Shown: one piece after another, positions 1,189-58,035 of the stretch
Numbering within the stretch: position 1 is the stretch's first letter
How the letters are laid out: the number at the start of each line of letters is the position of its first letter
Notes under the pieces: model-generated
Seen by the model: the letters and a program-made list of their open reading frames with translations, nothing else
The model's database searches: none
Told to the model about the DNA's origin: nothing
Assembly: GCF_036588685.1 (NCBI RefSeq)
Contig: NC_086381.1
Location: 37,944,001-38,008,000, forward strand
Direction: 5' to 3'
DNA length: 64,000 bases
From: Mytilus trossulus
Taxonomy: Eukaryota
Program-made: the position numbers and the translations under genes

Positions 1189-1369
1189 CTAACATCTCAG
1201 AACCATACAGGAACAGCATTGTGGTAGACGTTTATATTGACGAATTAACTGACCAAGTTTTGGACACCAAATATAATAAACCATGGTCTTGAAATTAGTT
1301 TGCCTGCAAGCCTTTATTCCGGGGAAGACATGTTCTGATACAGCTGTCACTCCAAGACAACTCCTTTGT
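1189..1369 (-). CDS. Paralogue A coding exon 5 (C-terminal half of the cystine knot)
   Basis: Acceptor ttattttacag, stop TAG at 1189-1191; encodes ...WCPKLGQLIRQYKRLPQCCSCMVLRC, homologous to exon 5 of B, C and D. Confidence 0.9.
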
Positions 1370-4300
1370 CTGTAAAATAATCAAAAAGTCACATTAATGT
1401 TCCCCAGTTTATGCAAAGTAAACTATAAAATCCCCAGACCTGGCCAGACTACGTAGTTAATTCATGTTCACAAGTTACAATGTACATAATTAACATATAT
1501 ACTGATGTTTATTCGCTGGTTTTAATTGGATGTATGAACGACTGTGTTTAACGTTCGGTGAGGTGTTGCTATATTGCTCCGTGCTCATTTAATAAAAACA
1601 TCCAACAATTGCAATTATGGTGAAATATTGAAACTAAATATAAGGATTTACGTAACGCAATATGTAAACCGTCATTATGATCAGTTCAAAGAACAAACAG
1701 CCAACAATATTTGAAGGAAACGCTTTACCATTTGGTCTGAGTTTCGTGTCATGAAGACATATACAATTCCCCTGTTTCCGTGTAAACACTCCCCCCCCCC
1801 CTTTCCAAAAAGGAGAAAAAACAACAACAACTAACAACTTGCAAAACCTTTAGAGTCAATTTTTCTGTTGTTAGATGTAACTTATAAGTTTTTGACTGAG
1901 AACTAATTTCTATACTTTAGTGGTTTTCTATGTTTTTAATGGTCAGATGTTCATTTGATATCTAAACACTTGTTGTCTTTCGGACTTTGGTGAGTAGTTT
2001 TTTTATTGACCATCTGCATACCAGACTTTTGTAAGCAAGTAATGTTTATAAACTACCGGACAGTGTATTGTATTGATTGTTACCTGAATTGATTTGTAAT
2101 ATTTCTCTTACTCCATAGGTCGTATGTACACGTATAGTTATTGATTGGTTATTTCCCTTTATTGTTTCCCGCCTCACGTTCATTATCAAATGTGCCTTCC
2201 AAACTATCACATATGTTAGTTTTCTCCCCTGATTAAAAGCGCTACAATTAAACGTAGAGTTAAGTGTAGTGAGAATATGTTACCCGACATACTTACTGAC
2301 AACCAACGAATGGACATCCACCTGATTGTCTAACCCATGGTCGTAAGATCCAACAATGATGTCCGTGGAATTCAGTGGATTTGGGGAAAAAGAATAGATT
2401 TTGAACAGCAGGACAGGTATCAATCCATTGTGTAGACGTGTGTTGGGGAGGAGGTGGTGGTGCACCATATGAACCATGAGAAGACCTGAAATATATAAAA
2501 AACTGATATCAGGTATAATTAAATAACAGCTGTATTAAATAAATTTCATTTAATCCTTGTCGTACATGCGCGGAAAAAAAATATGACTAAGTTTTTGTTA
2601 GTGAAAGAAGTTGGAGAAACCACCGACCTTCGTTAGAAAAAACTGACTATCCTAGCTATATTGAATTGAGATAGCCTAGTTCTTAATGCACCTGCCTATC
2701 ACTTGCATGATTCGAAATCATCACGTCAGTATTGACAGTCTTTTTATCTAGTAGTTTGATGAGTTAGACCATTCGTCCAACGAAGCCGATTGATGCAATT
2801 ATAACTCTTCATTATGAGTATCTAGTTTGCAAAATTTTTAAAATATGTTATGTAATATTATTTATTCTATGTTCAAAAAGCGTCCATTAAAATAGTTTTT
2901 ATCAAAAATATTTTTCTAAACTTGACCAAATATAGCTTTAGAAATCGCGATTGCAAGGAACTTCTCTTTACATAACTACATATGTTTTCAGTGTTTAATC
3001 ATGAAAATGTGCTAGAGTATTACTTGTTTCTCAAATTATGTGGACAAATTTATAACAAATACTGATATTGTACAAACCACGTGCCCATTTTCATTTTATT
3101 TTTCCCAAACTTTTTTTTTAGTAATTTGGCCCGTCGTGCTATACATCCCAACAGCTCATATTTATAAAACGTAGGGCTTCTCCATTTTTTGTTTTTTATT
3201 ATTTATTTTCCGGCGTATTTTGTCAAGCATACTGTAACACAAACACCTATTTGTGAAATTAAAAATAACAAAGTATGTAGAATATAATTTTATGTACATG
3301 TATAAGTATTATGATTACTTACTTGGCTTTGTGTCGATTACAGTGACATGAAGCTGTTCGTCTTGCTTGTGACACGTGTCTGTTGAAATGTCTACTGGAC
3401 TTTCGCAAATATCTTGAAATATCGGTACTAAAATCAGAGAAAAACTGTTATTCTAAATATATATGCATGTATATTGTGTAAATTTGAATAAAGTATTCAT
3501 TTATCATCAATGTCAAACAATTTTAGAAATTGAAGTTTAAAATGTAGATTAATCTTCCACTCCAATCTAAGTCGTACCAACACCGTGACTAAAAAAGATT
3601 TGGCTTGTTTAATATTCGTTTAATTTTTACAAAATATTGCAAAAAATATAAAACTGCAGCAAATTTAAACCATATCATTTACTAGATTTTTTTTTTGAAA
3701 TTGCAGTTCGACAAAGTTTTACACTAATTTTGATAATTGTGAAGCTTGATTCCTCTTGAATTATAGAATATTTGATTAAAACGTTCACAACAGTTGACTT
3801 TTAAAGAGTTAACTTCCCTCAGGTATATTTTCACATTAAGTTGCTCCATTCGATCAAATTTGTTTTTTATGTATTATAATTTTGCCTATCAAACTGCAAC
3901 AGATGAAGGATCATAGATAAAACAGTTTTTTTATGTTCTGACAAATGGGTGGACGTGTTTAACAATACTTCAATTATATAAAGTCTGCTAGAAAACATGA
4001 CACAATATTCAGAATTCAAGCCGAACAGTCTTTATCGCTATTTACAAATATATATACCATGTTGTTATTGGATAAACAGTAAAATGCAAATAGTCAGACC
4101 CAAGACACTTCGGAATCTCGAGACAAACATTAGAGATCTTAGGTCAATTGATCAATCAAAACTTTTTATCCCTACTTTTAGATTATTGTACGTAAACGTA
4201 TTTGTAACATATCTTAATATATATGAGTCAAATCTAATACAAGCACACACAGAAAACAGTTGAATTATATGTCTGGGTTTGTGTTTTCATTTTCCCAGTT

Positions 4301-5570
4301 TGCTGTGTAAGTTGAAACAAAGGCATATCAGTACATACGCAGGATATTTTCCGACTAGCTGGACATCACTCAATTTTGTAACGGTTTCATCTCTTGGTGG
4401 AACACATCGACCTACAGGCTGTGGAGCTTTGACGGGTTGTGGGTGTCGCAGATACTGGTGAGGCGGTAAGGGTTGGTCATGGTGAGGTGGAACTGGTTGG
4501 AGGTGGGGAGGAAGAGGGTGATGAAGAGGTAATTGTTGTAGATGAGGAGGGAGAAGCTTGTGAGGAGGTAATGGTTGAAGATGGGGAGGCAGTTGATGGT
4601 GAGGTGGCACCTGTTGTAGATGGGGAGGAAGAAGATGAGGAGGAAGAGGATGATGAGGCGCTACTGGTTGGAGATGGGGAGGCAGAGAATTGTGAGGTGG
4701 CCCTTGTTGGAGATGGGGAGGGAGAAGATGTTGGAGGTGAGGAGGAAGAAGATGTGGAGGTGGCACACGTGGTACGAAATGGCGAGGTGGGGGATGGTAA
4801 GTGTTTGATTGAACTGAAACAACACACACTACCAGTATCAATATCATATGTGGAACCTGCTAAAAGGAAAAATCAGGAAAAATAGTACACATGAATTATA
4901 TGTTCTTACGATATAATTTAAGATAATTACACAAGTATTGTAATAAAGTTTGTTATCTGAAGAATTGTCTTCCGATAACAAAATAAGGCTTTTTTCACAT
5001 TTCGTCTTAAGCATAAGTATCTTTTTAACTGATTTAAATAAATACTTTAAAATTTAAAGTAAGTTTTGAAAATGATATAATATAATCCTCAACTGCATTT
5101 CATAAAAAAAATTTAAAAAAAATATGAACTGACAAAAAACAAGACGTTTCTGTCCGTTCAATTTTAAATAGTTATCAAAGGTACCAGAATTATAATTTGA
5201 TACGCCAGACACGTTTTTCGTCTACTTTAGACCCACCAGTAACGCTCAGATCGAAATAATTAAATAGCCAAACAAGTATAAAGTTGAACAACATTAAGGA
5301 CCCAAAATCCCCAAAATACGATTAAGGTTATCTATTCCTATGATACAAAAATCCTTTGTTTCCGAAAAAAATTAATAAAAAAGTCTCTTAAAAGTTATGT
5401 TAAAATTTCCTAAATGCAATCTTTTTCTAGTTTATTAGAATTATTTTGATTTTAGCTATTTTCTTACAATTTTATATCATTTTGAATATCACTTATATTT
5501 TATCTTCATCATTTGTTAATTAGAAAGATGGTCGTATTTTAGCTAAGGAGTAATAATATATTCTTACCAT
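1189..5570 (-). CDS. Paralogue A: secreted His/Pro-repeat protein with C-terminal Spaetzle-like cystine-knot domain, 331 aa, join(5568-5570,4339-4856,3323-3427,2297-2485,1189-1369)
   Basis: All introns are GT..AG with phases 0,2,2,2, and the 996-nt spliced CDS is open. Protein: MVPHMILILVVCVVSVQS (signal) - His/Pro repeats - GRCVPPRDETVTKLSDVQLVGKYPA-TDISRYLRKSSRHFNRHVSQARRTASCHCNRHKAK-SSHGSYGAPPPPPQHTSTQWIDTCPAVQNLFFFPKSTEFHGHHCWILRPWVRQSGGCPFVGCQ-QRSCLGVTAVSEHVFPGIKACRQTNFKTMVYYIWCPKLGQLIRQYKRLPQCCSCMVLRC*. AATAAA (minus strand) at 1164-1169. Exon 1 is the least certain part. Confidence 0.88.
2297..2485 (-). CDS. Paralogue A coding exon 4 (N-terminal half of the cystine knot)
   Basis: tttcag acceptor and GTAAGT donor; WIDTCP..FFFPK..CWILRPW..CPFVGC matches exon 4 of B, C and D. 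Confidence 0.9.
3323..3427 (-). CDS. Paralogue A coding exon 3 (basic pro-region)
   Basis: ttttag acceptor and GTAAGT donor, 105 nt, phase 2-2; same size class as exon 3 of the paralogues (105-108 nt). Confidence 0.82.
4339..4856 (-). CDS. Paralogue A coding exon 2 (signal peptide + His/Pro repeat + CxxP..GKYP motif)
   Basis: ttttagcag acceptor and GTATGT donor directly after the GKYP motif, the same position as in B, C and D; overlaps ORF 4287..4847. Confidence 0.9.
4455..4765 (-). repeat. Coding minisatellite, ~39-bp / 13-aa unit LPPHLQ[QP]xPPHHx
   Basis: Units LPPHLQQGPPHNS, LPPHLQPVAPHHP, LPPHLQQVPPHHQ, LPPHLQPLPPHKL, LPPHLQQLPLHHP, LPPHLQPVPPHHDQP, plus partial units. Confidence 0.9.
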
Positions 5571-6519
5571 GTTACTTTATTAAGAGTATTGCCTCCACAA
5601 TAATGAATGCCCGGTCACAAAATTGAAAATGACAAAAAAATTGCAACGCATTTAGTTTTAAAGTACTTGCATGAAGTTTATCCCTGTGACGACATCCGAA
5701 ATCTTTAAATTGGGGATTTATTGAAACAGATGCCTCCACAGTATATTGACAAACAATCTTACTAATGAAAATATATCAAATGTAAACATGAATTGGGGAA
5801 ACAACTCAATAAAAATTACATACTTTGTTCCTTTCATATTAACAATTAGACGTAAAGTAACGTGTAAAAGGTAATCAGCCTAACATGATAAGGAAAACAA
5901 CAATTAATTTGCGCGCCTAAACTTCTTAGGTGTGGCAGTGATTCATGCAAATAATTCTTCAGTTCAGGTTAATATTCTATGTAAGGTCAGCAAAAACTGC
6001 ATATTAAAAAATACTGCAGCAACACTGTATGCATTGACGTTAATCTCAATTATTATAAAACGAACTTGTGTCACGTATACCAACGCAATGGAATCCAAAA
6101 CGGCAAGTTTATTGTAAGCAAAACTATCTGTATTATAATACATGTATTAACAAACAAGACTTAGTTAATCTTAACTTGTTGAGTGTTAACAGCCTGTCTC
6201 TAGTCCTTTCTCGCGCTATACTTTTTTAAGGATAAATAAACAGAATATTTTTCAAACGCAATGTTTTTTTCCAAGACTTATCATAACTTGCTTTCAGCAA
6301 TGGTTATGCGTATCCATCCATTCGTCTTCCTTTGTTGTGCACAGTCCATTTTATACTCTGGGAAAAACGAATTATGATATACTGCTGTTCTTTGTTAATA
6401 TGCTAGCACAATAAATGAAGAATCATTCTGTGTGCCCCCTTACGGTTGTTGTTATTGACTATAAATGTGTGGCAATCAGTTTTACGTGTACTACTGTAAA
6501 AAACATGACGAATATACAC

Positions 6520-11015: not shown

Positions 11016-11202
11016 TTAGAACCCTAAACAATACAGAGTCATACATAAACAAGTTTGAGGTAATCTAACATATCTTCGAACAATCCCAGACCTCAGACAC
11101 CATATGAAATAGTCAAATGACCTCAATGTAGAGCTTCTGCAAGCCGTGACTCCTGGACCATTCCGGCTGACTATTCCTTTTACACTAAAACAAGCTTTAT
11201 TT
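11016..11202 (-). CDS. Paralogue B coding exon 5
   Basis: ttttacag acceptor; 3' part of ORF 11016..11441; WCLRSGIVRRYVRLPQTCLC. Confidence 0.9.
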
Positions 11203-14200
11203 CTGTAAAATATAATTTTAATGGTATGATTTGCCAATTGCATTTTTGAGCTTACAAACGAATAAAAGAACACCAATATTTTTTGTGGTTGAGTAATTAG
11301 TAAATTAAAATGATAATTTATTTGTAAATCAACAAATACAGTATAAGGCCTATATTTTAAAATATAAAAAAAAGAAAGATGTGGTATGACTGCCAATGTG
11401 ACGATGCTCCTCAAGAGACCAAATGGCACAGAAATTAACAACTATAGGTCACCACATGGCCTTCAACAATGTGCAAAGCCCATACCACATTGACAGCTCT
11501 AAAAGACCCAGAAATTAACTGTAAAAAGGTTCAAACGACCTAATATATGAACCAAAAACGAACAAAAACAAATTTGTAGATACATCTTAGTGTGATCATT
11601 TATTTGTAATAGCAATTTATCTCCTTGTTTTTGCATCTTATGTATTACTCACGTGCATGTAACGTAGGGACAATGCATTTGATACCATGGAAATACCATC
11701 CAACATGTTTTCCCATCATGTGTGACAGTTCTCGGAAAGTAAAACCTCTTGGAAGAGGATGAGCATGTAGGAGACCAGGTAGGGCGAGGTTCTATTTCAG
11801 TAGCTCTAGGAAAGAAATCAAATGGTCTTCCAGCTAGACTTTCGTTAAATCTTGGTCTGAAAAGATATATTTGTACTCGAAATTAATACTTGAATGGAAT
11901 ATTTGTTACCTTGTCATAACTTTCAATACTACAGTTGTTTCAGTAAAAACTTTTTATCAGGCCAACTTTATATACCTATAGCGGATAATACTACAAAAAA
12001 ATTTATTTTACTATACATATGTTATTTTACATAAGCAGATCCAAAACATGCACACACATAATTTTACTGCTTGACAGTGATTCCATTCACAACCGTTATC
12101 ATTCTATTTGCCTTCTTACAACACCAGGAATGCATATGTATTCAAACTGTATTGCAGTTTCGGAATACTTAGAGATTCAAATGTTATAAATTTGTTTCCC
12201 AAAGTAATAGGACTATTTGTTCTAATGCTCTATCGCAGACAGGAAGTTTTGAATTTATTTGTGATTTTAATTTATTGATCAAGGTCGCCTTATAAGTATT
12301 GACCTTTGTGTTTTTTAATAAGAATTTTAACCATTCAATGATTGATCAAACTAATTACTAGTAGTAAAAATTCCTTTTTTGATGCAATGAAGAAACTTTT
12401 CTGATCATCAATGTAGGCGAGAGCAGAAATTAAATTTTGTAAAAAGAAGTGATTGCATTTATCAGTTCATAATTTAAATAATGAACTATAATACTGCTTA
12501 ATATTTATTATTCTTTTTAAAATATCTCACTGAAAAGGGTTGTATCTGTAACACAGACTGTTTGTATAACTTCTTGCGGTTTGGAGCCAATCTCTTGTGT
12601 ATCTGTCTAACTTACTGATTGCATTGTCTACAGACGTTCTGGAAATGAAAAAAAATAACATTATGTCGAGTGCTTAACTTGAAGGTTAAGCAAATCCTGC
12701 TCCACATGTAGCACCCGTCATGTTGCTCATGTTAATACAAACCCGGTCATAATGGTCATCTAGCACTTTTTGTTGAAATTGCCTGCCGGAAGATCATGAT
12801 ATCTTTAAAGTTTCTAGAATTCCACGTAATCAGGAATCGTCATCAGATGAATCAATTACAATTTTTTTCTCGTGTAATCCACAATCATGCATTTTCGTAT
12901 TAAAGGATATGGTATTTAACATAAAAATAGGGTTTCACAACTGGATATTGACAAGTGCAGTAACACGAGATTTGCCATCTAAATACACACAAATATAAAA
13001 ATTACCAGGTTTTATGACATACTTAAATTGATCGTCTTACAAATACTATCTGTATTTTGATTCCAATGGTTAGTTTTGGTTTTGTTACGTGCTTTTACAA
13101 TGCACTATCTACTCACATTGGATACTTGTCAGCAACTTTCACTTCAACCAACTCTTTTAACGGTGTTTCCTTTGGTCTAGTGCAAAGTGGTGGGTTAGCT
13201 ATTGGAGTAGCTTGTGTTTCAGGAGTATCTAGTTGCGAATGGACAGCAGAAGACATCGCTAAAAATAATGTCATTTGCAGCCTCTAAACATGGAATGACA
13301 AATAAGTAAGAATTCAGTTTAATATTAAAATTTTCTGTTTTTTGCTTTGGATCTGCGCTAAATATCGATTATATTTAATAGTCATATCATCTGTTAGTTT
13401 CATTAAGATTTTCTTAAATTTCAATATGATTACTTATATCTTATCGTATAATTTCCGAAACATATTCTCCTGTTATGGTTGTGAAGTTGAATTATTATTA
13501 GTGTTATCGTCCTGCATATGCATGTTATACTGACACAACCACCAACAAATAAACAAATGTATTAATTATTCGTTATAAGATTGAATACATGAATTGACAT
13601 TTTCAAATTTTATATTTCATACCATTTTTCTTCGCTTCAATGGCGTATGTAATTATTTGCCTGTTTCTTCGAAAGTCATATTAGTGGAGCGGCGGAGAGG
13701 ACAATTTCAGAAATTTAAATAGCATAAATACCTCATGGAATTTTAATAGCTCATTGGAAAGCCGAAATCGTATACTTTTTGAAAATATGTGTCGTAAATA
13801 TGAAAGCTTGTACCATTATGCCGAAAACCAAGATCAAAGGTCATCACGAAAAAGTCATATTCTCATCTAGTAAAACAATACCATTGATATTTTTCAAAAT
13901 TAGTAATCTATTTAATAAATTAAATGAGTATTATTATGTATCAATGTGTTTGTTCATACCTTTTTTTTCATTTGGACATGACGTCAGAACAACGTTATAT
14001 TTAACTTTTTTGAAGGTAGTCCGTGGTATACAAATTTTAAAGCCTAATAAAAAAACAGTAGCATAATAACCGGGATATTTCACCTCGACAAAGAACATTT
14101 CTTGAATAGTTTAGGATAAAAGTTTTTAAAAAAGTATTCGAAATGCATAGTTTATAAATCAAACAATAAAACTGTGCAGCCGTGTTAAATTTCCATTCAG

Positions 14201-20200: not shown

Positions 20201-21426
20201 ATCACAAAGCTTCGGAAATAACAAAATGAACAATAAATATGCTTGTTTACAATTAACCTTCGAAAAATTGTTGAATGTTGGACTATAAATAGAAACCACA
20301 ACAAAGTCGGTAAATTTGTGACAAATATTTGGACTTGAAATCTCGATAAAAAGCATTTATTTAGTCAAATATTTATCTATTTAGAAATTAACTGCAAAAA
20401 GTAAATCGAGTCGATTGTAGTATTATACGGCGGTTTTATTGTTGTGCCTTTAAAATACACATCTACTGCACGTGTAAATAATGCTAGGTGAAAACGATGA
20501 TTTTTCAGTGTTATTTTCAACCATTTTCAGATGCATTGTGCTTTCCATATAGGACTATTTGAAAATGCTCTTAAATTGAATAAAGTAAAGAATTACTATA
20601 TTTACCAATTTCGTATTTTTTAGAACGAGTTTGATATGAGATATGAGTACCGAATCAGCAGTGGGATACACGATGCAAGTTGGGTTAAGGCTATTTTTAA
20701 CGTCATTTGTACCACATTGGATTTTTAAGACACACATTTTTCTGAAATTGAATAATCGATAGACATTTTAAGCCATTAAAATCCCATGAGGTATTTAGGT
20801 AATTTAAACTCGTTAACTAAGCGACTTTTTTAACAGTCGCCGCTCCACTATATGAAACGAGTTCCTTGAATGTTAATGTTATCAAAATTATTGAACCAAA
20901 TAAAATTGAGAATGGAAATGGGGAATGCACGCATATATACTAATGAAACATATTTTGCATACATGCTTTTAATATTTTTTACACATCTTTAACGTATAAT
21001 CGATATTTATTGAAATAACCTTCAAAAAAAGTAAAATCACAAAAACACTAAACTCCGATGACAATTCAAAACGGAAAGTCCCTAACCAAATGGTAAAATC
21101 AAATAATTAAACACATCAAACAAATGGACAACAACTGTCATATTTCTGACCTGTTACAGCCATTTGAAATGTAGGAAATGGTGGAATGAACCTTGTTTTA
21201 TAGCGTTTAACCTTTCACTTGTATGACAGTCGCATCAAGTTCCATTACATTTACAACGATGCATAAACAAAACAGACATAATAGTTACTAACAGTTGTTA
21301 AATAAATTGTTGAAATACATTTTGTTCTGATGAGTCTAATGCATCTGTTATTTCATTTTGCGAATTGTTTGTCTGTTACTTCTTATATTGTAATATTATA
21401 AAATTATTTTCTGATAGACTTACCAT
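11016..21426 (-). CDS. Paralogue B: secreted Spaetzle-like cystine-knot protein, 222 aa, join(21424-21426,13117-13283,12531-12638,11653-11856,11016-11202)
   Basis: Canonical splice sites, phases 0,2,2,2, open 669-nt CDS. MRLQMTLFLAMSSAVHS-QLDTPETQATPIANPPLCTRPKETPLKELVEVKVADKYPI-TSVDNAISKLDRYTRDWLQTARSYTNSLCYRYNPFQ-PRFNESLAGRPFDFFPRATEIEPRPTWSPTCSSSSKRFYFPRTVTHDGKTCWMVFPWYQMHCPYVTCT-NKACFSVKGIVSRNGPGVTACRSSTLRSFDYFIWCLRSGIVRRYVRLPQTCLCMTLYCLGF*. Confidence 0.88.
11653..11856 (-). CDS. Paralogue B coding exon 4
   Basis: cttttcag acceptor and GTGAGT donor; WSPTC..FYFPR..CWMVFPWYQMHCPYVTC. Confidence 0.9.
12531..12638 (-). CDS. Paralogue B coding exon 3
   Basis: tttccag acceptor and GTGAGA donor, 108 nt, phase 2-2, single conserved Cys. 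Confidence 0.8.
13117..13283 (-). CDS. Paralogue B coding exon 2
   Basis: tttag acceptor followed by AGGCTGCA (same start as C and D); GTGAGT donor after DKYP. Confidence 0.88.
14956..15709. mobile_element. Non-autonomous TTAA-targeting DNA element (Kolobok-like GG..CC termini) nested in the Academ nuclease ORF
   Basis: TTAA at 14952-14955 and 15710-15713; imperfect TIR GGTGTAACACC / GGATGTACACC. Removing the element restores the reading frame RVALTHHDVESAVVAAREFF. Confidence 0.72.
17782..17919. repeat. Short interspersed repeat copy nested in the Academ element
   Basis: CCAGCTGAAGGAC..ACATTGAAGACC..GGTCGGGTTGTTGTCTCTTTGACACATT..CTCAATTTTA also occurs at ~24548-24690, ~40805-40945 (inverted), ~45680-45740 and ~51300-51410. 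Confidence 0.8.
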
Positions 21427-28549: not shown

Positions 28550-28754
28550 TTAGGACTTATCAGCTCCTTGGAACCAAGGGCAGAACAGGTATTTACATGA
28601 ACAACATTGCGGCAAACGTACAAATTTTCGAACTAAACCAGCCCTTCGACACCAGACATAATAGTAATAATATTTATAGTTAGAATGTCCGCAGTACGTG
28701 AATCCTTGATTAAATATGGAGACTGTACCCTTCACTCCTGAACAACGGCTTTGC
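28550..28754 (-). CDS. Paralogue C coding exon 5
   Basis: ttttag acceptor; 3' part of ORF 28550..28870. Confidence 0.9.
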
Positions 28755-34700: not shown

Positions 34701-35275
34701 TATAATCTCAAATGGTTTTATGATGACTTATTTCTGAGGAATATGTTTCGACCAACAAGAACTTTATCAAAAGTGGTTTTTTTGAAGATTAATACCTGTA
34801 TTCATCTGTATCATGCGTATTTACCTGTATGATTGGCGCAAATGAAACGTTTAATTATTGGCGGAAATCAAGTATAGTTTGTGGCGCAAATGAAAGATTT
34901 TTTTGGCGCAAAAGCAAAGCACCGGCTTAAAATTGGTGCTGTCCTTGATTGTAAAATTGACGGATTTATATATTTGAAACTTTGATTACATTTACATTTC
35001 TGCCAATACGCTGACAACGAGCAATCTTATATACGTCAAAACGTATTTCTTTTTTTTTCTTTGGTCGATTTGGCAACATTGTAGATATTTACTGGGTTTT
35101 TTTTCAAACATACAGTCACGTATTTTAGAAATAAATCGGCTCTTCAGTCAAGTTAAGGTAGAGTTGAAATGTGTAAATACATGCCTGAAATCATTGTTTA
35201 AACAAATTTGTAATGTAATACATTAAATGGGTGAATAAAAAAAAAAAGGAAATATAATCATATTTGACTTACCAT
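28550..35275 (-). CDS. Paralogue C: secreted Spaetzle-like cystine-knot protein, 227 aa, join(35273-35275,33630-33808,31795-31902,28984-29172,28550-28754)
   Basis: Canonical splice sites, phases 0,2,2,2, open 684-nt CDS. MRLQFTLQLVIIVVYA-QPEVKEPPGKPVDEASLEKRRICFRPKEPEIEELVAAKTSGKYPA-AAIRKAINTMRGSIKSELENARVLGRGLCEHFHFAS-SRPANVVPPAQSFSSRTSSPFWRDTCPSITSYYYFPRAVWHNREICWVLSPWYNLRCKRAYCR-QSRCSGVKGTVSIFNQGFTYCGHSNYKYYYYYVWCRRAGLVRKFVRLPQCCSCKYLFCPWFQGADKS*. AATAAA (minus strand) at 28493-28498. Confidence 0.9.
28984..29172 (-). CDS. Paralogue C coding exon 4
   Basis: tgtttag acceptor and GTAAGT donor; lies within ORF 28980..29180. Confidence 0.9.
31795..31902 (-). CDS. Paralogue C coding exon 3
   Basis: attccag acceptor and GTAAGT donor, 108 nt; AAIRKAI..AR..G.GLCE aligns with ASIRRAI..AR..GHGFCE of D. 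Confidence 0.87.
33630..33808 (-). CDS. Paralogue C coding exon 2
   Basis: tttttag acceptor followed by AGGCTGCA; GTAAGT donor after SGKYP. Confidence 0.9.
34296..34925. mobile_element. Non-autonomous element with inverted arrays of TTCATTTGCGCCA subterminal repeats (intron 1 of C)
   Basis: Three TTCATTTGCGCCA copies at 34321-34383 and four inverted TGGCGCAAATGAAA-like copies at 34834-34912. Confidence 0.65.
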
Positions 35276-35366
35276 TGTTCGGCCAGGACTTCCAGGTTTA
35301 CAGAATAACTAATAAAAAATAGTATAACAAAACTTTCCTTTGAAAAGTTTTGTTACAGTCTTAGTC

Positions 35367-43985: not shown

Positions 43986-44154
43986 CTAAGGGCATCTCAG
44001 TCGCATACATGAACAACATTGCGGCAATCGGATACGTCTTCGCACTAAACCGGACCTTGAGCACCAAATATAATAATAATATGACCTCCATGTACTCTGT
44101 CTGCAGGCAGTGATTCCTGAATATGCTTCCTTTACTCCTTGACAACCCCTAGAT
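43986..44154 (-). CDS. Paralogue D coding exon 5
   Basis: ttttatag acceptor; lies within ORF 43986..44180. Confidence 0.9.
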
Positions 44155-47100
44155 CTATAAAAATATATGTATCGTGTCAAATGGAAGCTTTTTCGAGAAC
44201 AGTAAAACCACCCATATTTCTGATACCGGATTAAATGATATATATATATATGATTTCTTGCAAATCAAATTATAAATGCCGAATTATGTATGATGCAACA
44301 AAGAAATGAACACTAACACATACTGTATTCGGAAATGATTCCATTTTAATTCATAAATTTTAATTCAATACATGACATCATTAGCATTCTGAACATTAGT
44401 CACGCGTTTCAAATCTTTTTTTGAAAAGCAACTTCTCATATTTAACCTTATGCCATGCGTTTAAATAGAACATACTGAATTGAACTGTGCGTGGTTTTTC
44501 TGTAGCAGTAAAAAAGTAATTTTTAACAACAATCACACAACTTTCATGAATATTACTCACGTGCAGGCAGTGTAGGGACAACGTAGACGATACCATGGAG
44601 AAAGCATCCAGCATGTTTGTCCTTTGTATACGATGGTTTTTGGAAAGTAAAAGTACTTTGTGTATTTTGGGCACGTATCAAGCCAGAAAGGAACAGGTCT
44701 AGGTGAAACAGATGATTTGTCAACAGGTTTTACATCAGCAGTTCTAAAAAGATACAATTGTATTAAATGAACTAAATATGTGCCTATTGTTATGCGTTAA
44801 CTTTTCTACATTGGTTTGATGTATATGGGGAGGATTGAGATCGCTTAAACATGTTTGACCCGGCCGCATTTCAGCGCCTGTCCCAATTCAGGAGCCTCTA
44901 GCCTTTTTAAGTCTTGTATTATTTTTACTTTTAGTTTCTTATGTACAATTTGAAATTTAGTTTGGCTAAGGTAATCTTGCCTGGGATAAGAAAATCCTTA
45001 TTTTTTCGAACATTTCAAAGTTTTGCTAGCAGAAAATTTATAACAATGACCACAGTATTGATATTCATGTCAACACCGAAGTGAGACTACTGGGCTGGTG
45101 ATACTCTCGGGGACCAAACGTCCACCAGCATTGGGATCGACCCAGTTGTGTAAATAATTATCAAAGGTACCAGGATTATAATTTAGTTCGCCAGACGCGC
45201 GTTTCGTCTACAAATGACTCGTCAGTGACGCTCAGATCAACATAGTTGTATCGTCAAATGTGTACGAAGTTGAAAAGTATTGAGGACCTAAAATTTCAAA
45301 AATGTTGTGCCAAATACGGCTAAGGTAATCTATGCCTGGGATAAGAAAATCCTTAGTTTTTCGAAAAACTCAAAGTTTTGTTAGCAGGAAATTAAAAAAA
45401 ATGACCACATTATTGATATTCAAGTCAACACCGAAGTGGGACTACTGGGCTGGTGATACCCTCGGGGACCAAACGTCCACCAGAATTGACATCCACCCAG
45501 TGGAAATAGTTATCAAAGGTACCAGGATTATAATTAAGTACGCCAGACGTGCGTTACGTCTACAAAAGACTCGTCAGTGACGCTCAGATCAAAATAGTTG
45601 TATCGTCAAACATGTACGAAGTTGAAGAGCATTGAGGACCTACAATTACAAAAATGTTGTGCCAAATACGGATAATTTGTCTGTTCTATGGTCGGGTTGT
45701 TGTTTCTTTGACACATTCCGCATTTCCATTCTCAATGTTAAAATTGACTGCTTAAAGTATCATTTTCCTTAGTTATAGATTATATATTTAAAATAACAGA
45801 TGATACTATAACATACATTATGCGGCAGTAAACGTTTTATGAAATTTAGATTTACAGCGCTTTCGGAAGACAAAACAAAGAATTAAACGAACAATCAGTG
45901 CTCACTATAACAAAGAAAAAAGAAAAACACAAACAAACTGAGCACACGACAATGACTAGAAAGTATATACATGTACATTGGAATACCAGTTTCACTTTGT
46001 AAATTCTGAACAAAACTGGTTACAAAATACGTATTGATATTTTCATATTCTGTGTACTTAAACATTTAAAGTAGAAGATTTTCATAAAATAGGTAATCTT
46101 AGAGGCATGCTTTTTTATTAGTTGTTAATGGCTTTGAACTAGCTGTCTGATAACTGCGAGTACTCTCAGATCTATTGATTTTGTGTCGGGATGTATAAGT
46201 ACCCGGCCACGTCCACTTGTATTTTTTGTCTATCTGATGAGTTAAGCCTTTTTCTACTGATTTTTATAGTTCGTTCTTATGTTGTACTGTTATACCACTG
46301 TCCCAGGTTATGGGAGGGTTGGGATCCCGCTAACATGTTTAACCCCGCCACATTATTTATGTATGTGCCTGTCCCAAGTCAGGAGCCTGTAATTCAGTGG
46401 TTGTCGTTTGTTTATGTGTTACATATTTGTTTTTCGTTAATTTTTTTACATAAATAAGGCCGTTAGTTTTCTCGTTTGAATTGTGTTACATTGTCTTATC
46501 GGGGCCTTTTATAGTTGACTATATGCGGTATGGGCTTTGCTCATTGTTGAAGGCCGTACGGTGACCTATAATTGTTAATGTTTGTTTTATTTTGGTCTTT
46601 TGTGAATAGTTGTCTCATTGGCAATCATACCACATCTTCTGTTTTATAAGTTCATAATCAGATGAAGTTTTGTATGTACATACGTATATGCAAAACCTAA
46701 TATTCCATCATTGAATGAAAATGAAATGTTCACGCACCGGTGTAAATTTGTATTGAACTTCTTTATTTTAGTTGATCGTTTCACTGTCATATTCAAATTC
46801 TGGATCGAAATTATTTTCAAAGGAAATGATTGAAAATTTAAAAGATTCTTTATTGGCAAATCGGAGATTTTGATTCACAAAAAGACATACGTTTCTTTGT
46901 AGTTCATAATTGCTTTATACTAACTGGTATTGCTTTTTTGTGAACGTATGTGCTATAAAATAAACTCATCATAGATACCAGGAATGTCATTTTATATTTA
47001 CGCCAGACGCGCGTTTCGTCTACAGAAGACTCATTAGTGACGCTCAGATCAAAATAGTTATAAAGCCAAACAAGTATAAAGTTGAAGAGCATTAAGAACC

Positions 47101-50100
47101 AAAAAAATCTAAAAGTGTTGCCAAAGAAAGCTAAGGTGATCTATTCCTGGGATAAGAAAATCCTTTGTTTTTTTTCAAAAAACTCAAAGTCTTGAAACAG
47201 AAAATTTATAAAAACCACCATATAAATGATATTCATGTCAACATCGAAGTGCTGACTTCTGGGCTGGTGTATAAAATTTGTAAACACTTACTTGTGTCTG
47301 TATGTTTCACAAAAACCGTGTCCATGACCTCTAGCAAAATGAAGATCGTGTCTGTTCCTTCTTCGGGACTTAAATATAGCTCTTCTTATAGATGCACTGA
47401 AAATACATGCATGTACAGTTATTAAACAACCTGACAGCTGCCACATGTGGAGCAGGATCTGCTTACCCTTCCGGAGCACCTAAGATCACCCCCAGTTTTT
47501 GTTGGGGTTCGTGTTGCTTAGTCTTTTGTTTTCTATGTTGTGCCTTCAGTACTATTATTTGTCTATTTGTCTTTTTATTGGCGTTTTCAATTTATTTTCT
47601 ATCTATGAGCTTGACTCTCCCTTTGGTATCCGTCGTCTCTCTTTTGTTAGGGAATTATAGTTTAGTCAAAATAAATGAAAAAGGATCGGGTTTTTTTCGA
47701 ATGCGAGGTGATGCTAGTTTTTCTTCTTGAGATACAGTTTAACACAAATTTTATCTGTTTTAGCAGTAGAAAATTGATTTTAAGTCGTTTATTCGGGTTG
47801 GTGATTTGTTTAAACTGTCTATGATATATTTGTGTTTTCATTAATTGGCGAATGCCTTATGTTGTTTACAAGGTATTCGGGAACAAGTCCTTCTTATAAT
47901 ATTGGGTCATATGTAATATATTCTAACATTTCTTACATTTCATTATTTCTTAAGTGATTGTTTAAGGATATATATAAAATCATATTCAAAACAGTGTGGT
48001 CCTGGCCATTGATTGACGACCTAAATTATCCCAATTGACTGGGACAGATTAGGTGAACGTTTGTCGGTAACAATCACTGCTCACTATGTACTTGTTAAAG
48101 ACACTGAATCTGTGGGGTCACCAAAGGTTCTCAACACCTAAATTAAGCAATTCGAAAAACGAATCCGGAATAATACGATGTGTTGATTTGTATTAATAAT
48201 ATAAATCAAAACATAAAGGTTATTCCTGAATAATTTTTCGAATTATTTTATTATTAAAGGTGTTAACCTTTGGTGACCCCACAGTTTAAATTCTATAATA
48301 AGTAAGAAGTGAGCAATGGTCGTTACAGACAAACGTTCACCTAATCTGTCCCAGTCAATAGGATAATTTAGGTCGTCAATCAATGGCCAGGACCACACTG
48401 TTTTGAATATGATTCTATATATATGTGTTACATATGGCTATGATCCATTTGTTAGAATAACAACACAAATCCGCCCTGCTTTTCTCGGTATACATGGTAT
48501 AACATAATCAAATGAAACTCATAGTTGTTCATACAATGACTTATCATTTTTTATCTTTCCAGAATCACCTCAATTTACTCATGCTTAGTAGTAAGGTTGC
48601 ATGGTGCTGTTAAATATTCAGTTTCTGCTAAATGTGATTTTGAAATTGCTGGTTGTCTACTTTATATTTACTAAATCCATGTAGTTAACCTTTTTCCACA
48701 CATATTATGATTCGTTCAAATACAGAATTTAAATATTGGGACCACACCCTAGAACACTACAACTCCATTTCTATAAAATAACGTCTTTATTTAATTTTTG
48801 CCATCTTGAAAAAACGCTTAGATGCTAGCAACCTGATAGAATTCACAACTTTTGTTTTGGTGAAGTGTTTACTTGTTTTAACAATGCTAAATGTACTTAC
48901 GTTGGATATCTGCCGGAACGTCTTGCTTCAACCAACTCCTCTATGTGTATTTGTTTTGGTCCAGTGCAAACCCTGTTAGGAGTAGGTTTTGGAGCAATAT
49001 TAGGAACAGGAGTAGGAGTAGTAGTTGTAGGAGGATTCGTAGTTGAATCTGTGTAAAGAGCAGAGGTAGAAGGAGGAGTAGGAGGAGGAGAAGGAGGAGG
49101 CATGCCACCATGAATAACTGATGGCACGTAGATGACAAAAATCACTAAACGTAATGTGATGTGCAGCCTCTGAAATAAAAATAAAATTGATCTGTAAATA
49201 ATCTCCATTTGTTTTTTGTTTAAGGTAACGTTATTTTGGCGAATGTGATATACCTAAGTATCTCAGACATTTAAAACAAATTAAAATCTATTAGTATAAA
49301 ATTTAATAGATAAAATGTCTAATAACATTTAAAAATAGATTTCGATGCGATAGTTATAACTTAAAATTAACGTTCTTGAAACGCTTTGGGTACGCATGTG
49401 GTAAAATATGAATATATTGCCAGGGCAATTCTGTTTGTACTCCCACGTCATATGCGTTCTTATGAATGAGGTACCCGACGTCATGGAAAGATGACGTAAG
49501 AAATATAAGCATTTTACGGAAAAACTGAAAATCATCACAACAAGAAAAGTTGTGCTAGGCGTATTTCAGCTGACCCCTAGACAAAAAAGTGTACTGGTTC
49601 AGCGATTATAGACGTAATACTAAACTCCGAAACATAACAATGAACTAAAATCAAAATCATAGAAGACTTAGAAGGACAGAGGCTCCTGGATTGGGACAGG
49701 CGCACAAATGCGGCGGGGTTTAACATGTTTCGTGAGATCACAACCCTCCCCTATACCTCTAGCCAATGAAGAATGAAAAACACACAGTAATACGAACAGT
49801 AAAACGCACTTCAGTAGGAAATACAAGTCCTATGTCAGAATAGGAAACAAACTAAGAAACTAATTAACATGCATGACAATGATAAAAAAATAACAAAGGA
49901 CTACTATACATAAGGCTAGCAGTTACTGGCATACGCCAGCTCCAGACCTCAATTAAACTAATTGAAAGGTTTTATATGTCCTCATTATGCACACTCTCTC
50001 CCCGTTGCATTTATTGCTAATTTGTTCCGGAACATTCATGAAATATTTGTCACTGGCAACAACAAAAAATCGAAAATTTAAAATAGGTTGTTTACATACA

Positions 50101-56100: not shown

Positions 56101-58035
56101 TTGTAAGAGGGAAATTTATAAAATGATAGGAGTAAACAACATCAACTGGATGCAGGATCACGAGTATTCATAGCTTCATACATAAATAGCAATACATATT
56201 TTGTTACTAGTAAACAAACTAGAGGCTTTAAAGAGCCTGTGTCGCTCACCTTGGTCTATGTGCAAATTAAACAATAGACACAGATAAATTCATGACACAA
56301 TTGTGTTTTGGTGATGGTGATGTGTTTTAGATCTTTATTTACCGAACATTCTTTTGCTATAATTATCTATAATGAACTCGGCCAAATAATTACAGTGGGA
56401 AGTATTTTGTGAAAATTTACAAAATTTTATGAAAATTGTTAAAAATTGACTATTAAGGGCAGTAACTCCTAAAGGAGGCAACTGACCATTTTGTTCAAGC
56501 TGATTTATTGGTAGATCTTACTTTGCTGGACATTATTGCTGTTTACAGTTTATTTCTATCTTAAATAATATTCAAGATAATAACCAAAATCTGCAAGATT
56601 TCCTTAAAATGACTAATTCAGGGGCAGCAACCCAACAACTAGTTGTCCGATTTGTCTCAAAATTTCAGGACGGATAGGTCTTGACCTAATCAACAATTTA
56701 ACTCCCTGTCAGAATTGCTCTAAATGCTTTGGTTTCAGAGTTATAAGCCATAATCTACATTTTACCCCTATGTTCAATTTTTAGCCATGGCAGCCATCTT
56801 GGTTGGTTGGCCGGATCACGCCACACAATTTTTAAACTAAATACCCCAATGATGATTGTGGCCAAGTTTGGTTAAATTTGGCAGAGCAGTTTCAAAGAAG
56901 AAGATTTTTGTAAAAGAATACTAAAACTTTTGAAAAATGATTAAAAAAAGACTATGAAGGGCAATAACTCCTTAAGGGATCAACTGACCATTTTGGTCAT
57001 ATGACTTATTTGTAGATTTTACTTTGCTGAACATTATTGTTGTTTACAGTTTATCTCTATCTATAATAATATTCAAGATAATAACCAAAATCTGCAAGAT
57101 TTCCTTAAAAATACTAATTCAGGGGTAGCAACCCAACAACTAGTTGTCCAATTTGTCTCAAAATTTCAGGGCGGATAGGTCTTGACCTAATAAACAATTT
57201 AACTCCCTGTCAGAATTGCTCTAAATGCTTTGGTTTCAGATTATAAGCCAAAATTTACATTTTACCCATATGTTCTATTTTTCGTCATGGCGGCCATGTT
57301 GGTTGGTTTGCCGGGTCACGCCACACAATTTTTAAACTAGATACCCCAATGATGATTTTGGCCAAGTTTGTTTAAATTTGGCCCAGTAGTTTCAGAGGAG
57401 AAGATTTTTGTAAAAGTTTACAGACGACGGACGACAGACGCAGGACGCCGGACGACGACAGACGACGGACGCCAAGTGATGAGAAAAGCTAACTAAAATA
57501 TTTGTATCAATGAAATAATAAAATGAAAGTTTGTTGTTTATCTGGCGTTAAAGAAACCATTACTTAATAATTTACAAGTGATACATATAATACGTTTATT
57601 GAAGTTTTAATTGCACCTTCGGACATGGACTTAGTCAACACTGTGAAATAAACACCATGTTTAATGAGGCTAAAGGAATAGCAACATTCAAAACATAAAA
57701 ACTTGACAAACGAAGCAGAATCGTCTGTGTTATCGTTAATGTGTGTGTAGTGTTTCCTGTGTTTATCCGAATTAATTATAATACATATTTTTGAATCGAA
57801 ACGGACAACAATTGCTGTCTTATTCGATTTAAGTTTATTTGGTAAACTTATGCAGTTAATTTGAATACTTTTGATTGTTTGATGTATTGCGTCTGTTCCG
57901 CAGTGATCTGTCACTATGTATTTCTGAAAACAAACTACAAAGGTTTTTTTGCTTTCTTACCATGATTTTTTTTCTTTAAGTCAGTATATTTTAGAATTTT
58001 AATCACATAAAATACACGGTAAGAGGACTTACCAT
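43986..58035 (-). CDS. Paralogue D: secreted Pro/Thr-linker Spaetzle-like cystine-knot protein, 242 aa, join(58033-58035,48901-49169,47292-47396,44561-44743,43986-44154)
   Basis: Canonical splice sites, phases 0,2,2,2, open 729-nt CDS. MRLHITLRLVIFVIYVPSVIHG-GMPPPSPPPTPPSTSALYTDSTTNPPTTTTPTPVPNIAPKPTPNRVCTGPKQIHIEELVEARRSGRYPT-ASIRRAIFKSRRRNRHDLHFARGHGHGFCETYRHK-TADVKPVDKSSVSPRPVPFWLDTCPKYTKYFYFPKTIVYKGQTCWMLSPWYRLRCPYTACT-SRGCQGVKEAYSGITACRQSTWRSYYYYIWCSRSGLVRRRIRLPQCCSCMRLRCP*. Exon 1 was chosen because its upstream sequence resembles that of C. Confidence 0.88.
44561..44743 (-). CDS. Paralogue D coding exon 4
   Basis: tttttag acceptor and GTGAGT donor; lies within ORF 44557..44757. Confidence 0.9.
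44964..45672 (+). repeat. Interspersed repeat family 2, two tandem ~354-bp units
   Basis: GGCTAAGGTAATCT at 44964 and 45318; core TATCAAAGGTACCAGGATTATAAT..CGCCAGACGCGCGTTTCGTCTAC. Other copies at ~5166-5370, ~29700-29960 (rev), ~36751-37398, ~46960-47270, ~53040-53250 (rev) and ~55876-56120. Confidence 0.85.
46100..46645 (-). repeat. Interspersed repeat family 1 copy in intron 3 of D
   Basis: Reverse complement of 26525-27120 with high identity. Confidence 0.85.
47292..47396 (-). CDS. Paralogue D coding exon 3
   Basis: ttttcag acceptor and GTAAGT donor, 105 nt; lies within ORF 47288..47479. Confidence 0.87.
47968..48424. mobile_element. MITE-like foldback element with ~170-bp terminal inverted repeats in TA-rich flanks (intron 2 of D)
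   Basis: AATCATATTCAAAACAGTGTGGTCCTGGCCATTGATTGACGACCTAAATTATCC.. is mirrored almost perfectly at 48320-48414. Confidence 0.85.
48901..49169 (-). CDS. Paralogue D coding exon 2
   Basis: tttcag acceptor followed by AGGCTGCA; GTAAGT donor after SGRYP; lies within ORF 48897..49208. Confidence 0.9.
52319..52455. repeat. Long palindrome, ~60-bp arms with a 13-nt spacer
   Basis: TCGGGTCAATAAAATTCATATCGGGT-ttggctttgtctc-ACCCGATATGAATTTTATTGACCCGA is perfect, with imperfect outer arms. Confidence 0.85.
56215..57490. mobile_element. Non-autonomous Helentron-like (HINE/pearl-type) element with ~500-bp internal tandem repeats
   Basis: Starts ACTAGAGGCTTTAAAGAGCCTGTGTCGCTCACC (short palindrome); tandem units start at ~56449 and ~56951; ends with a (GACG/GACA)n microsatellite and GCCAAGTGATGAGAAAAGCT. 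This architecture is typical of bivalve HINE-like elements. Confidence 0.7.

What the first reader, a model, noticed from the sequence alone, without database searches (positions are those of the whole stretch)
1189..58035. Hidden tandem cluster of four intact, divergent secreted Spaetzle-like cystine-knot genes
Seen: four co-oriented minus-strand genes with the same 5-exon architecture (phases 0,2,2,2), all splicing into open frames. They share the C-terminal pattern WxxTC-x6-7-FP[KR]-x8-CW-x3-PW-x4-6-C-x4-C-x4-C-x-[GS]V...C...[YF][IV]WC..G..R..RLPQ[CT]C[SL]C-x4-C. Established: Drosophila Spaetzle C106 has a similar layout (C..YPK...C...C...CxQ...KIPSCCKC) behind a signal peptide and cleavable pro-domain. 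Inference: this is a lineage-expanded Spaetzle/neurotrophin-fold family in a mollusc-like genome. The copies are highly diverged yet free of disabling mutations, which suggests an old, functional multi-component system such as Toll-type ligands or co-secreted matrix subunits.
Basis: partly seen in the sequence, partly recalled or inferred. Interest (0 to 1): 0.9.

Follow-up and report, generated by a model that had tools for sequence, protein, structure and literature searches.

The report
Four unannotated Spaetzle-like mussel genes
The window, from the mussel Mytilus trossulus, holds four intact tandem genes for secreted proteins whose C-terminal half is a divergent Spaetzle-like cystine-knot domain, a cytokine type barely described outside arthropods, but whether they are expressed and what they do remain untested.

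Summary
Four co-oriented minus-strand paralogues (A 1189-5570, B 11016-21426, C 28550-35275, D 43986-58035) share five exons with intron phases 0,2,2,2. All splice sites are canonical, all frames are open, and the cysteine pattern is shared. Introns 2-4 of A and C match full-length public Mytilus proteins. Exon 1 is the bare ATG, as in an annotated fifth paralogue 4.7 Mb away.

The genome is Mytilus trossulus. Public relatives are all labelled "uncharacterized". No protein encoded by the window turned up in any search, so the genes appear unannotated.

Three weak but concordant lines support the Spaetzle/neurotrophin-fold reading:
- Spaetzle is the only recurrent Pfam hit and spans the whole domain, but stays below threshold (best E 3.7e-5, 24.7 bits, cut-off 27).
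- Two AlphaFold models (pLDDT about 60) match almost only cystine-knot cytokines, at low scores.
- ESM Atlas features put Spaetzle clusters first (0.91-0.92).

The family is divergent: 10-11 cysteines in exons 4-5 against Spaetzle's 7 (from memory), and strongly cationic. It seems confined to mussels.

Function as a Toll ligand is inference only. First readers of this scan also noted Spaetzle-like clusters on other DNA of this genome.

The parts
1189..1369 (-). Gene A exon 5 (phase-2 acceptor, includes stop TAG at 1189-1191); second half of the cystine-knot domain, ends RLPQCCSC-x4-C
   Evidence: 97% identical to P0014
2297..2485 (-). Gene A exon 4; W-x2-TC ... FPK ... CW-x3-PW ... C-x4-C
3323..3427 (-). 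Gene A exon 3; basic helical segment with the invariant Ala-Arg and one conserved Cys
4339..4859 (-). Gene A exon 2; signal-peptide-like start, His/Pro-rich 13-aa tandem repeat (25 His and 49 Pro in 173 aa), then C-x2-PR ... GKYP
   Evidence: The acceptor at 4859 was chosen by alignment to P0014/P0001
5568..5570 (-). Gene A candidate exon 1 coding part (ATG followed by GTAAGA); least certain of the four
   Evidence: P0014 and P0001 begin with M followed by the exon 2 sequence
11016..11202 (-). Gene B exon 5 (includes stop); reads PQTCLC where the others read PQCCSC, so one cysteine is missing
11653..11856 (-). Gene B exon 4
12531..12638 (-). Gene B exon 3
13117..13283 (-). Gene B exon 2 (starts RLQ, hydrophobic signal-like segment, C-x2-PK ... 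ELVE ... KYP)
21424..21426 (-). Gene B candidate exon 1 coding part (ATG|GTAAGT); intron 1 is about 8.1 kb and holds a decayed repeat block at 14.4-20.0 kb
28550..28754 (-). Gene C exon 5 (includes stop); run of five Tyr before V-W-C
28984..29172 (-). Gene C exon 4
31795..31902 (-). Gene C exon 3
33630..33808 (-). Gene C exon 2
35273..35275 (-). Gene C candidate exon 1 coding part (ATG|GTAAGT)
43986..44154 (-). Gene D exon 5 (includes stop); the only single exon with a Pfam hit of its own (Spaetzle, E 0.026, 15.6 bits)
44561..44743 (-). Gene D exon 4
47292..47396 (-). Gene D exon 3 (contains the basic run SRRRNR)
48901..49169 (-). Gene D exon 2 (signal-like start, Pro/Thr-rich linker, C-x2-PK ... 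EELVE ... RYP)
58033..58035 (-). Gene D candidate exon 1 coding part (ATG|GTAAGT); intron 1 is about 8.9 kb

Best explanation
The window holds a tandem array of four functional paralogous genes in Mytilus trossulus. They encode secreted pro-proteins of a divergent, mussel-restricted branch of the Spaetzle-like cystine-knot cytokine superfamily.

Shown: each gene has five exons, with exon 1 being the ATG alone.
- Exon 2 gives a hydrophobic signal-like segment, a variable low-complexity linker (His/Pro repeat in A, Pro/Thr-rich in D) and a conserved Cys plus an ELVE...KYP motif.
- Exon 3 gives a basic helical segment with an invariant Ala-Arg.
- Exons 4-5 give a cationic domain of about 115-130 residues with 10-11 cysteines, predicted to form the long beta-hairpins of a cystine-knot cytokine.

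Inferred mechanism, by analogy with Spaetzle, coagulogen and pro-NGF: the precursor is secreted. A serine protease or convertase cleaves it in the basic exon 3 segment, at the invariant Arg or at nearby RxxR or dibasic sites. The C-terminal domain dimerises, using the first Cys of the CC-x-C motif, which B lacks. The dimer then acts as an extracellular ligand, most plausibly for members of the expanded mussel Toll/TLR repertoire.
For: Gene structure and intactness.

Orthologue and paralogue protein models reproduce the junctions.

Purifying selection: dN/dS is 0.28-0.49 over exons 4+5, with dS of at least 0.86.

Pfam: Spaetzle PF16077 is the only recurrent hit and spans the domain end to end (positions 3-95 of 96). 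Scores are P0011 E 3.7e-5 and 24.7 bits, P0008 E 6e-4, P0002 E 1.3e-3, and gene D exon 5 alone E 0.026.

Fold: the AF2 models of P0013 and P0011 have core beta-hairpins at pLDDT 70-90. Foldseek and VIA top lists are almost entirely cystine-knot cytokines:
- NT-4/5 at E 7e-3, then NGF.
- Coagulogen, Z 4.2 over 126 residues.
- Noggin, Z 3.7-3.9.
- PTTH, Z 3.5.
- Spaetzle 3e07, Z 3.5, and Spz1C.

ESM Atlas: Spaetzle clusters rank first for P0011 and for the gene A orthologue P0014, with scores 0.91-0.92 and 194-202 shared features.

Family expansion in the same genome: a fifth paralogue and a second cluster on C11.
Against: - All Pfam scores are below the gathering cut-off of 27 bits. Gene A-type (P0001, P0014) and gene C-type (P0013) proteins give no Pfam hit at all.
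- A family profile finds no Spaetzle, NGF or coagulogen chain in the PDB by sequence.
- Structural matches are weak (Z at most 4.2, Foldseek E at least 7e-3, model pLDDT about 60). They do not separate Spaetzle from NGF, coagulogen, noggin or IL-17.
- The domain has about four more cysteines than Spaetzle C106 (7, from memory).
- There is no expression evidence, and the dimer test gave no verdict.
- No receptor or protease evidence of any kind exists. Strong positive charge and Tyr-richness are also compatible with a non-signalling role.
Confidence: 0.6

Rival explanations
1. The cystine-knot scaffold has been recruited for a structural or material role. In this reading the products are secreted matrix, adhesive or byssus/shell-associated proteins, or a coagulogen-like clottable protein, rather than cytokines. 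The cationic, Tyr-rich domains and gene A's His/Pro repeat would serve cross-linking, metal binding or surface adhesion.
For: Exons 4+5 carry 12-20 Lys+Arg against 3-6 Asp+Glu, and up to 13 Tyr in C. Gene A has a 13-aa His/Pro tandem repeat, conserved in M. galloprovincialis and M. coruscus. Coagulogen is the best whole-chain structural match for one model (Z 4.2, 126 aligned residues) and second for the other.
Against: No sequence similarity to known mussel foot, byssal or shell proteins was seen in any search. The Z scores are too low to single out coagulogen, and Pfam Coagulin was not hit. The Tyr runs sit in a conserved beta-strand just before the conserved W-C, not in disordered DOPA-type repeats. 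A literature search for cystine-knot byssal proteins found nothing relevant.
Confidence: 0.15
2. The genes belong to another branch of the cystine-knot cytokine clan and act accordingly, not through Toll. Candidates are neurotrophin-like, trunk/PTTH-like, noggin-like (BMP antagonist) or IL-17-like.
For: Foldseek ranks neurotrophins first. Noggin is the top VIA hit for model 2, Z 3.7 over 114 residues including the helical N-terminal part. PTTH gives the lowest rmsd among the top VIA hits, 3.3 A over 75 residues. ESM Atlas lists NGF, noggin and IL-17 clusters at 0.84-0.87.
Against: Only Spaetzle is hit by Pfam. NGF, Noggin and IL17 profiles give nothing at E <= 10. Spaetzle clusters fill the top of both ESM lists, taking 15-17 of 30 hits.
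Confidence: 0.15
3. Some or all of the four copies are unexpressed relics: young pseudogenes, or dispensable presence/absence genes with no current function.
For: No protein encoded by the window appeared in any database search, so the annotation pipeline apparently made no models here. No RNA evidence was obtained. Introns 1 of B and D are long and full of repeats.
Against: All 4 x 5 exons are open and all splice sites are canonical and positionally conserved. Every conserved cysteine is kept except one in B. dS is at least 0.86 with dN/dS 0.28-0.49, and copies this old would not stay open by chance. Gene A has a 92-97% identical orthologue in M. galloprovincialis over exons 3-5.
Confidence: 0.1

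Closest known systems
Spaetzle (Pfam PF16077; Drosophila Spz C106, PDB 3e07; Aedes Spz1C, PDB 7b1c)
   Same: Both are secreted precursors with a signal peptide, a variable pro-region and a C-terminal cystine-knot domain of about 100-125 residues. The Pfam alignment is end to end (3-95 of 96). Both have C...[YF]P[KR] near the domain start and P-x-C-C-x-C near the end. Spaetzle is the top ESM Atlas neighbour.
   Different: Scores are below the Pfam cut-off (at most 24.7 against 27 bits). The domain has 10-11 cysteines in exons 4-5 instead of 7 (Spz count from memory). It carries extra CW...PW and WC motifs and a C-terminal C-x4-C extension, and is strongly cationic. The pro-region has its own conserved Cys and an ELVE...KYP motif. 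Processing, dimerisation and Toll binding are untested.
Horseshoe-crab coagulogen (PDB 1aoc)
   Same: It is the best or second-best whole-chain structural match (Z 4.2 over 126 residues; Z 3.3 over 124). It shares the layout of an N-terminal Cys-bearing segment, a helical segment flanked by Arg, then a cystine-knot core. It belongs to the same NGF/Spaetzle-like superfamily.
   Different: Identity is 9-12%, there is no Pfam Coagulin hit, and the Z values are within noise of other cystine-knot proteins. There is no evidence of clotting.
Vertebrate neurotrophins (NGF, BDNF, NT-3, NT-4/5)
   Same: They are the top Foldseek matches (E 7e-3 to 0.1, probability up to 1.0, TM on target 0.44-0.59). Both are basic proteins made as pro-proteins.
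   Different: There is no Pfam NGF hit, identity is 13-16%, and the cysteine count and spacing differ.
Uncharacterized Mytilus proteins already in public databases (e.g. M. trossulus LOC134683831, M. edulis XP_071122734.1, M. galloprovincialis VDI45799.1, M. coruscus CAC5360325.1)
   Same: They are true family members with the same exon layout and cysteine pattern. P0014 is the orthologue of gene A.
   Different: None carries a name, a domain annotation or a published description that I could find. The four window genes themselves were not found among them.

Membership tests
Spaetzle (Pfam PF16077) | Score at or above the curated gathering cut-off (27 bits) against the family HMM | tested here: not met
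   The best family member, P0011, scores 24.7 bits (E 3.7e-5). P0008 scores 20.8, P0002 19.8 and window gene D exon 5 alone 15.6. A-type and C-type proteins give no hit. The joined window proteins were not scored because the joined step was left out by rule.
Spaetzle (Pfam PF16077) | Alignment covering the whole cystine-knot domain rather than a local motif | tested here: met
   Profile positions 3-95 of 96 are matched in P0011, P0008 and P0002.
Spaetzle (Pfam PF16077) | Proteolytic activation of a secreted pro-protein and binding of the C-terminal dimer to a Toll ectodomain | not testable with these tools
   Only sequence hints are available: basic exon 3 with an invariant Ala-Arg. The homodimer prediction gave no verdict.
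Cystine-knot cytokine fold (NGF/Spaetzle/coagulogen/noggin/IL-17/TGF-beta clan) | Predicted structure with paired long beta-hairpins that matches solved cystine-knot cytokines | tested here: met
   For two independent models, 25 of the top 25 VIA-wide hits and nearly all Foldseek hits are cystine-knot proteins. Scores are low (Z at most 4.2) and model pLDDT is about 60.
Cystine-knot cytokine fold (NGF/Spaetzle/coagulogen/noggin/IL-17/TGF-beta clan) | Three disulfides in knot topology | not tested
   Model coordinates could not be inspected. The cysteines are conserved in all members, but their pairing is unknown.
Coagulogen (Pfam PF02035) | Sequence match to the family profile | tested here: not met
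   No hit at E <= 10 for any exon or full-length relative.
Neurotrophin (Pfam PF00243), Noggin (PF05806), IL-17 (PF06083) | Sequence match to the family profile | tested here: not met
   No hit at E <= 10. These appear only as lower-ranked ESM Atlas neighbours at 0.84-0.87.

The most novel reading that the evidence does not exclude
Mussels carry a lineage-specific, multi-cluster and fast-diverging family of Spaetzle-like pro-cytokines: at least five genes on this chromosome plus a second six-hit cluster on C11. These would be the endogenous, protease-activated ligands for part of the greatly expanded bivalve Toll/TLR repertoire. That would mean insect-style indirect Toll activation operating in a lophotrochozoan, with paralogue-specific add-ons such as gene A's His/Pro repeat and gene B's lost dimerising cysteine allowing heterodimers or new specificities.
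Probability: 0.2. Interest if true: 0.75.

Novelty: new variant of a known kind. Interest (0 to 1): 0.5.

Why it matters
A 2020 mussel immunology paper states that a spaetzle homologue had been described outside arthropods only in one clam (PMC7773633). How the very large bivalve Toll/TLR families are activated is still open.

A verified, expressed family of Spaetzle-like pro-ligands in Mytilus would provide concrete candidates to test for cytokine-type Toll activation in molluscs.

The four genes also appear to be missing from the annotation of a reference genome. This shows that short, multi-exon, fast-evolving secreted genes are being overlooked.

Tried and rejected
- The search for homologous proteins with the open stretch around gene B exon 5 found nothing.
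- Exon-by-exon Pfam scans gave only one weak hit.
- A six-frame search of the own genome with the Pfam Spaetzle model gave only noise-level hits outside the window.
- A family profile against PDB sequences returned a short gamma-crystallin match (E 0.006, 38 residues around a CW motif) and a designed helical bundle. I judged both spurious.
- Complex prediction homodimer of the mature region gave no verdict: score 0.00, the alignment was not used, and the fold was uncertain. This is evidence neither for nor against dimerisation.
- The 5' flanks of the four candidate first exons show no nucleotide conservation.
- Pfam on ten open stretches of the 14.4-20 kb block and other intergenic frames gave no hits.
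- Literature searches for Mytilus with Spaetzle or coagulogen, for byssus with cystine knot, for accession numbers and for Spz in bivalves found no description of this family. Papers that print the name with an umlaut cannot be searched.
- Mfp-6 was considered because it is Cys/Tyr-rich and cationic. It was rejected as a different, 123-residue protein with no shared pattern.
- Public full-length relatives served as proxies.

Full report
**What is in the sequence**

Comparing all minus-strand open stretches between the four intervals picked out three conserved coding blocks per gene. A search for phase-compatible internal exons found a fourth, short block.

Reading the boundaries base by base gives these exons:

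| Gene | Exon 5 | Exon 4 | Exon 3 | Exon 2 |
|---|---|---|---|---|
| A | 1189-1369 | 2297-2485 | 3323-3427 | 4339-4859 |
| B | 11016-11202 | 11653-11856 | 12531-12638 | 13117-13283 |
| C | 28550-28754 | 28984-29172 | 31795-31902 | 33630-33808 |
| D | 43986-44154 | 44561-44743 | 47292-47396 | 48901-49169 |

- All acceptors follow a pyrimidine-rich tract and AG.
- All donors are GTAAGT, GTGAGT, GTATGT or GTGAGA.
- Introns 2-4 are phase 2 at homologous codons in all four genes. The exon 2 acceptor is phase 0.
- With a 3-nt first exon, the coding lengths are 999, 669, 684 and 729 nt, all multiples of three.
- HMMs of exons 3, 4 and 5 find exactly four copies each and no further fragments in the window.

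**Exon 1**

Exon 2 of genes C and D has no Met near its start, so a first exon must supply the start codon. B, C and D all open exon 2 with a conserved RL[QH] that precedes B's internal Met. ATG followed at once by GTAAGT occurs three times on the minus strand, at 21426, 35275 and 58035. That is once upstream of each of B, C and D. A first-order Markov model expects 0.4 occurrences, with P(>=3) about 0.003.

The same layout holds in an annotated paralogue of the same genome, P0011 (LOC134683831).
- Its protein starts M-R-L-Y.
- The genomic R-L-Y codons directly follow a TTTAG acceptor.
- An ATG|GTAAGT lies 1.3 kb upstream.

For gene A the only candidate is ATG|GTAAGA at 5568-5570. Its orthologues begin with M followed by the exon 2 sequence. 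The flanks of the four candidates are not conserved in nucleotide sequence.

One small correction: TC and FP[KR] are 8 residues apart, not 6-7.

**Whose genome, and what is public**

A HMMER search of 1.84 billion representatives with the exon 5 profile gave five hits. Two are full-length Mytilus proteins. Follow-up searches added more.

P0011 is M. trossulus LOC134683831. It sits on a contig of 82,295,107 bases, the length of the window's contig C9, and it matches locus L001 at 100%. The window is therefore Mytilus trossulus.

| Protein | Species | Relation to the window genes |
|---|---|---|
| P0014 | M. galloprovincialis, 337 aa | 78% (exon 2) and 92-97% (exons 3-5) identical to gene A; its orthologue |
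| P0001, P0006 | M. coruscus | gene A type |
| P0013 | M. edulis | 59-72% identical to gene C |
| P0012, P0002, P0008 | M. edulis, M. galloprovincialis | group with the fifth paralogue |

These identities come, and the proteins reproduce the exon 2/3/4/5 junctions proposed here.

Every one is named "uncharacterized", "hypothetical" or "unnamed" and carries no precomputed Pfam domain. No paper cites their accessions. No protein encoded by the window itself was returned by any search, so the four genes appear to lack gene models. This is consistent with the title's "hidden", but I could not check the annotation itself.

Exons were searched singly by reference, and the public full-length relatives served as proxies.

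**Are the genes alive?**

- All exons are open and all conserved cysteines are kept, except one in B (PQTCLC against PQCCSC).
- Pairwise identity is 31-47% in exon 4 and 39-58% in exon 5.
- Over exons 4+5, computed per exon and summed, dS is 0.86 to saturated and dN/dS is 0.28-0.49.

Copies this old would not stay open and spliceable without selection.

**What kind of protein**

*Pfam.*
- Exon by exon, only gene D exon 5 touches a family: Spaetzle, E 0.026, 15.6 bits, C-terminal half of the model.
- Among full-length relatives, Spaetzle is the only recurrent hit. The alignment runs over positions 3-95 of 96. Scores are P0011 E 3.7e-5 (24.7 bits), P0008 E 6e-4 and P0002 E 1.3e-3.
- All are below the 27-bit cut-off, and A-type and C-type proteins give nothing.
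- A family profile finds no cystine-knot chain in the PDB by sequence.

*Predicted structure.* Two AlphaFold2 runs used 8-sequence alignments, with mean pLDDT 60-61 and core strands at 70-90. Both give two helices from the exon 3 region followed by long beta-hairpins from exons 4-5.

Foldseek hits for model 1 are neurotrophins (best E 7e-3, probability 1.0), sclerostin, coagulogen, Norrin, IL-17, PDGF and noggin. Model 2 gives the same classes, including Aedes Spz1C.

The Foldseek-independent VIA search of 48,161 chains returns cystine-knot proteins in all of its first 25 rows:

| Match | Z | Aligned residues |
|---|---|---|
| Coagulogen | 4.2 | 126 |
| NGF | 4.1 | 88 |
| Noggin | 3.9 | 119 |
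| IL-17A | 3.8 | 83 |
| PTTH | 3.5 | 75 |
| Spaetzle 3e07 | 3.5 | 83 |

For model 2, noggin (Z 3.7) and coagulogen (Z 3.3) lead. These Z values are low in absolute terms and do not rank subfamilies. The near-exclusive enrichment for one fold class in two models is the meaningful signal.

*ESM Atlas.* Feature search puts Spaetzle clusters first for both P0011 and the gene A orthologue P0014. Scores are 0.91-0.92, with 194-202 shared features and 15-17 of 30 hits. NGF, noggin and IL-17 clusters follow at 0.84-0.87.

Together these three lines support a divergent Spaetzle-like member of the cystine-knot cytokine clan. Formal Pfam membership is not met.

**Anatomy and likely mechanism**

Shown:
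- The N-termini are hydrophobic and signal-like.
- The linkers vary. Gene A has a His/Pro 13-aa repeat (period 39 nt) that is conserved in M. galloprovincialis and M. coruscus. Gene D has a Pro/Thr-rich stretch.
- A conserved Cys and an ELVE...KYP motif end exon 2.
- Exon 3 is a basic segment, predicted helical, with an invariant Ala-Arg and one conserved Cys.
- Exons 4+5 form a cationic domain with 10-11 cysteines, 12-20 Lys+Arg against 3-6 Asp+Glu, and up to 13 Tyr.

Inferred, by analogy with Spaetzle, coagulogen and pro-NGF:
- The precursor is secreted.
- It is cleaved in the basic exon 3 segment.
- The C-terminal domain dimerises, perhaps through the first Cys of CC-x-C, which B lacks.
- The dimer binds a receptor, with Toll/TLR the obvious candidate.

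The homodimer prediction gave no verdict and is not evidence either way.

The main rival is a non-signalling role, structural or coagulogen-like, suggested by charge, Tyr content and the His/Pro repeat. I found nothing that links the family to known byssal or shell proteins. Only expression and proteomic data can decide.

**Family size and range**

In the same genome, the exon 5 profile also finds:
- The annotated fifth paralogue at C9:33.25 Mb, E 8e-19.
- Six weaker hits in three minus/plus pairs at C11:24.98-25.04 Mb. Their exons end in LPQCCEC-x4-C and contain a CW motif.

This second cluster probably corresponds to another first-reader note of this scan (s1-829904).

Outside Mytilus, the exhaustive search found only a 60-residue metagenome fragment and one Logan-derived protein of unknown species. 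An exon-sized profile is not very sensitive, however.

**Novelty**

A 2020 paper on mussel haemocytes states that a spaetzle homologue had been described outside arthropods only in the clam Paphia undulata (PMC7773633). My literature searches found no description of this Mytilus family, with the caveat that the umlaut spelling cannot be searched.

The kind of protein is known. This is a divergent, cysteine-enriched, lineage-expanded and largely unannotated variant of it.

**Verdict**

- Observation: confirmed.
- Interpretation: partly supported. The fold and nearest family are supported; membership, expression and function are open.
- Interest: moderate.

Noticed in passing
window 14400-20100, minus strand (inside intron 1 of gene B): A GC-richer block (0.378 against about 0.32) holds many 80-214-aa open stretches in shifting frames and looks like a decayed mobile element. 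The ten stretches tested gave no Pfam hits. In M. edulis, one database model of the related fifth-paralogue cluster (P0007) is fused to a PiggyBac-derived zinc-finger annotation.
   Followed up: partly
G000:C9:33252333-33258146 (L001 6298-8244, L004 694-2146): A fifth family member lies 4.7 Mb from the window on the same chromosome. It is annotated as LOC134683831 (P0011), has the same exon layout, and gives the best Spaetzle Pfam score of the family (24.7 bits). It lacks two cysteines that the window genes keep.
   Followed up: yes
G000:C11:24980348-25042187 (L002, L003): A second, more distant cluster gives six exon-5-type hits arranged as three minus/plus pairs. The exons end in LPQCCEC-x4-C and contain a CW motif. 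It probably matches the other first-reader note s1-829904.
   Followed up: partly
window 4339-4859 (gene A exon 2): The His/Pro-rich tandem repeat (period 39 nt, units of the PPHLQP type; 25 His and 49 Pro in 173 residues) is conserved, with copy-number differences, in the M. galloprovincialis (337 aa) and M. coruscus (303 aa) orthologues. It is therefore a maintained feature of this paralogue.
   Followed up: partly
window 28550-33808 compared with P0013: The nearest M. edulis protein to gene C is only 59-72% identical per exon. Gene A is 92-97% identical to its M. galloprovincialis orthologue over exons 3-5. Either P0013 is not the orthologue (presence/absence variation, which is common in Mytilus) or gene C evolves much faster.
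   Followed up: no
window 5057-5321, 45073-45605, 46907-47140, 55845-56085; also 17700-18025, 24479-24710, 45609-45759, 51229-51509: Two families of interspersed repeats have translated similarity between the introns and spacers of different genes. They are unrelated to the gene family.
   Followed up: no
window 63671-64000, minus strand: An open frame of 110 codons runs off the window's end. It has no Pfam hit and its nature is unknown.
   Followed up: partly
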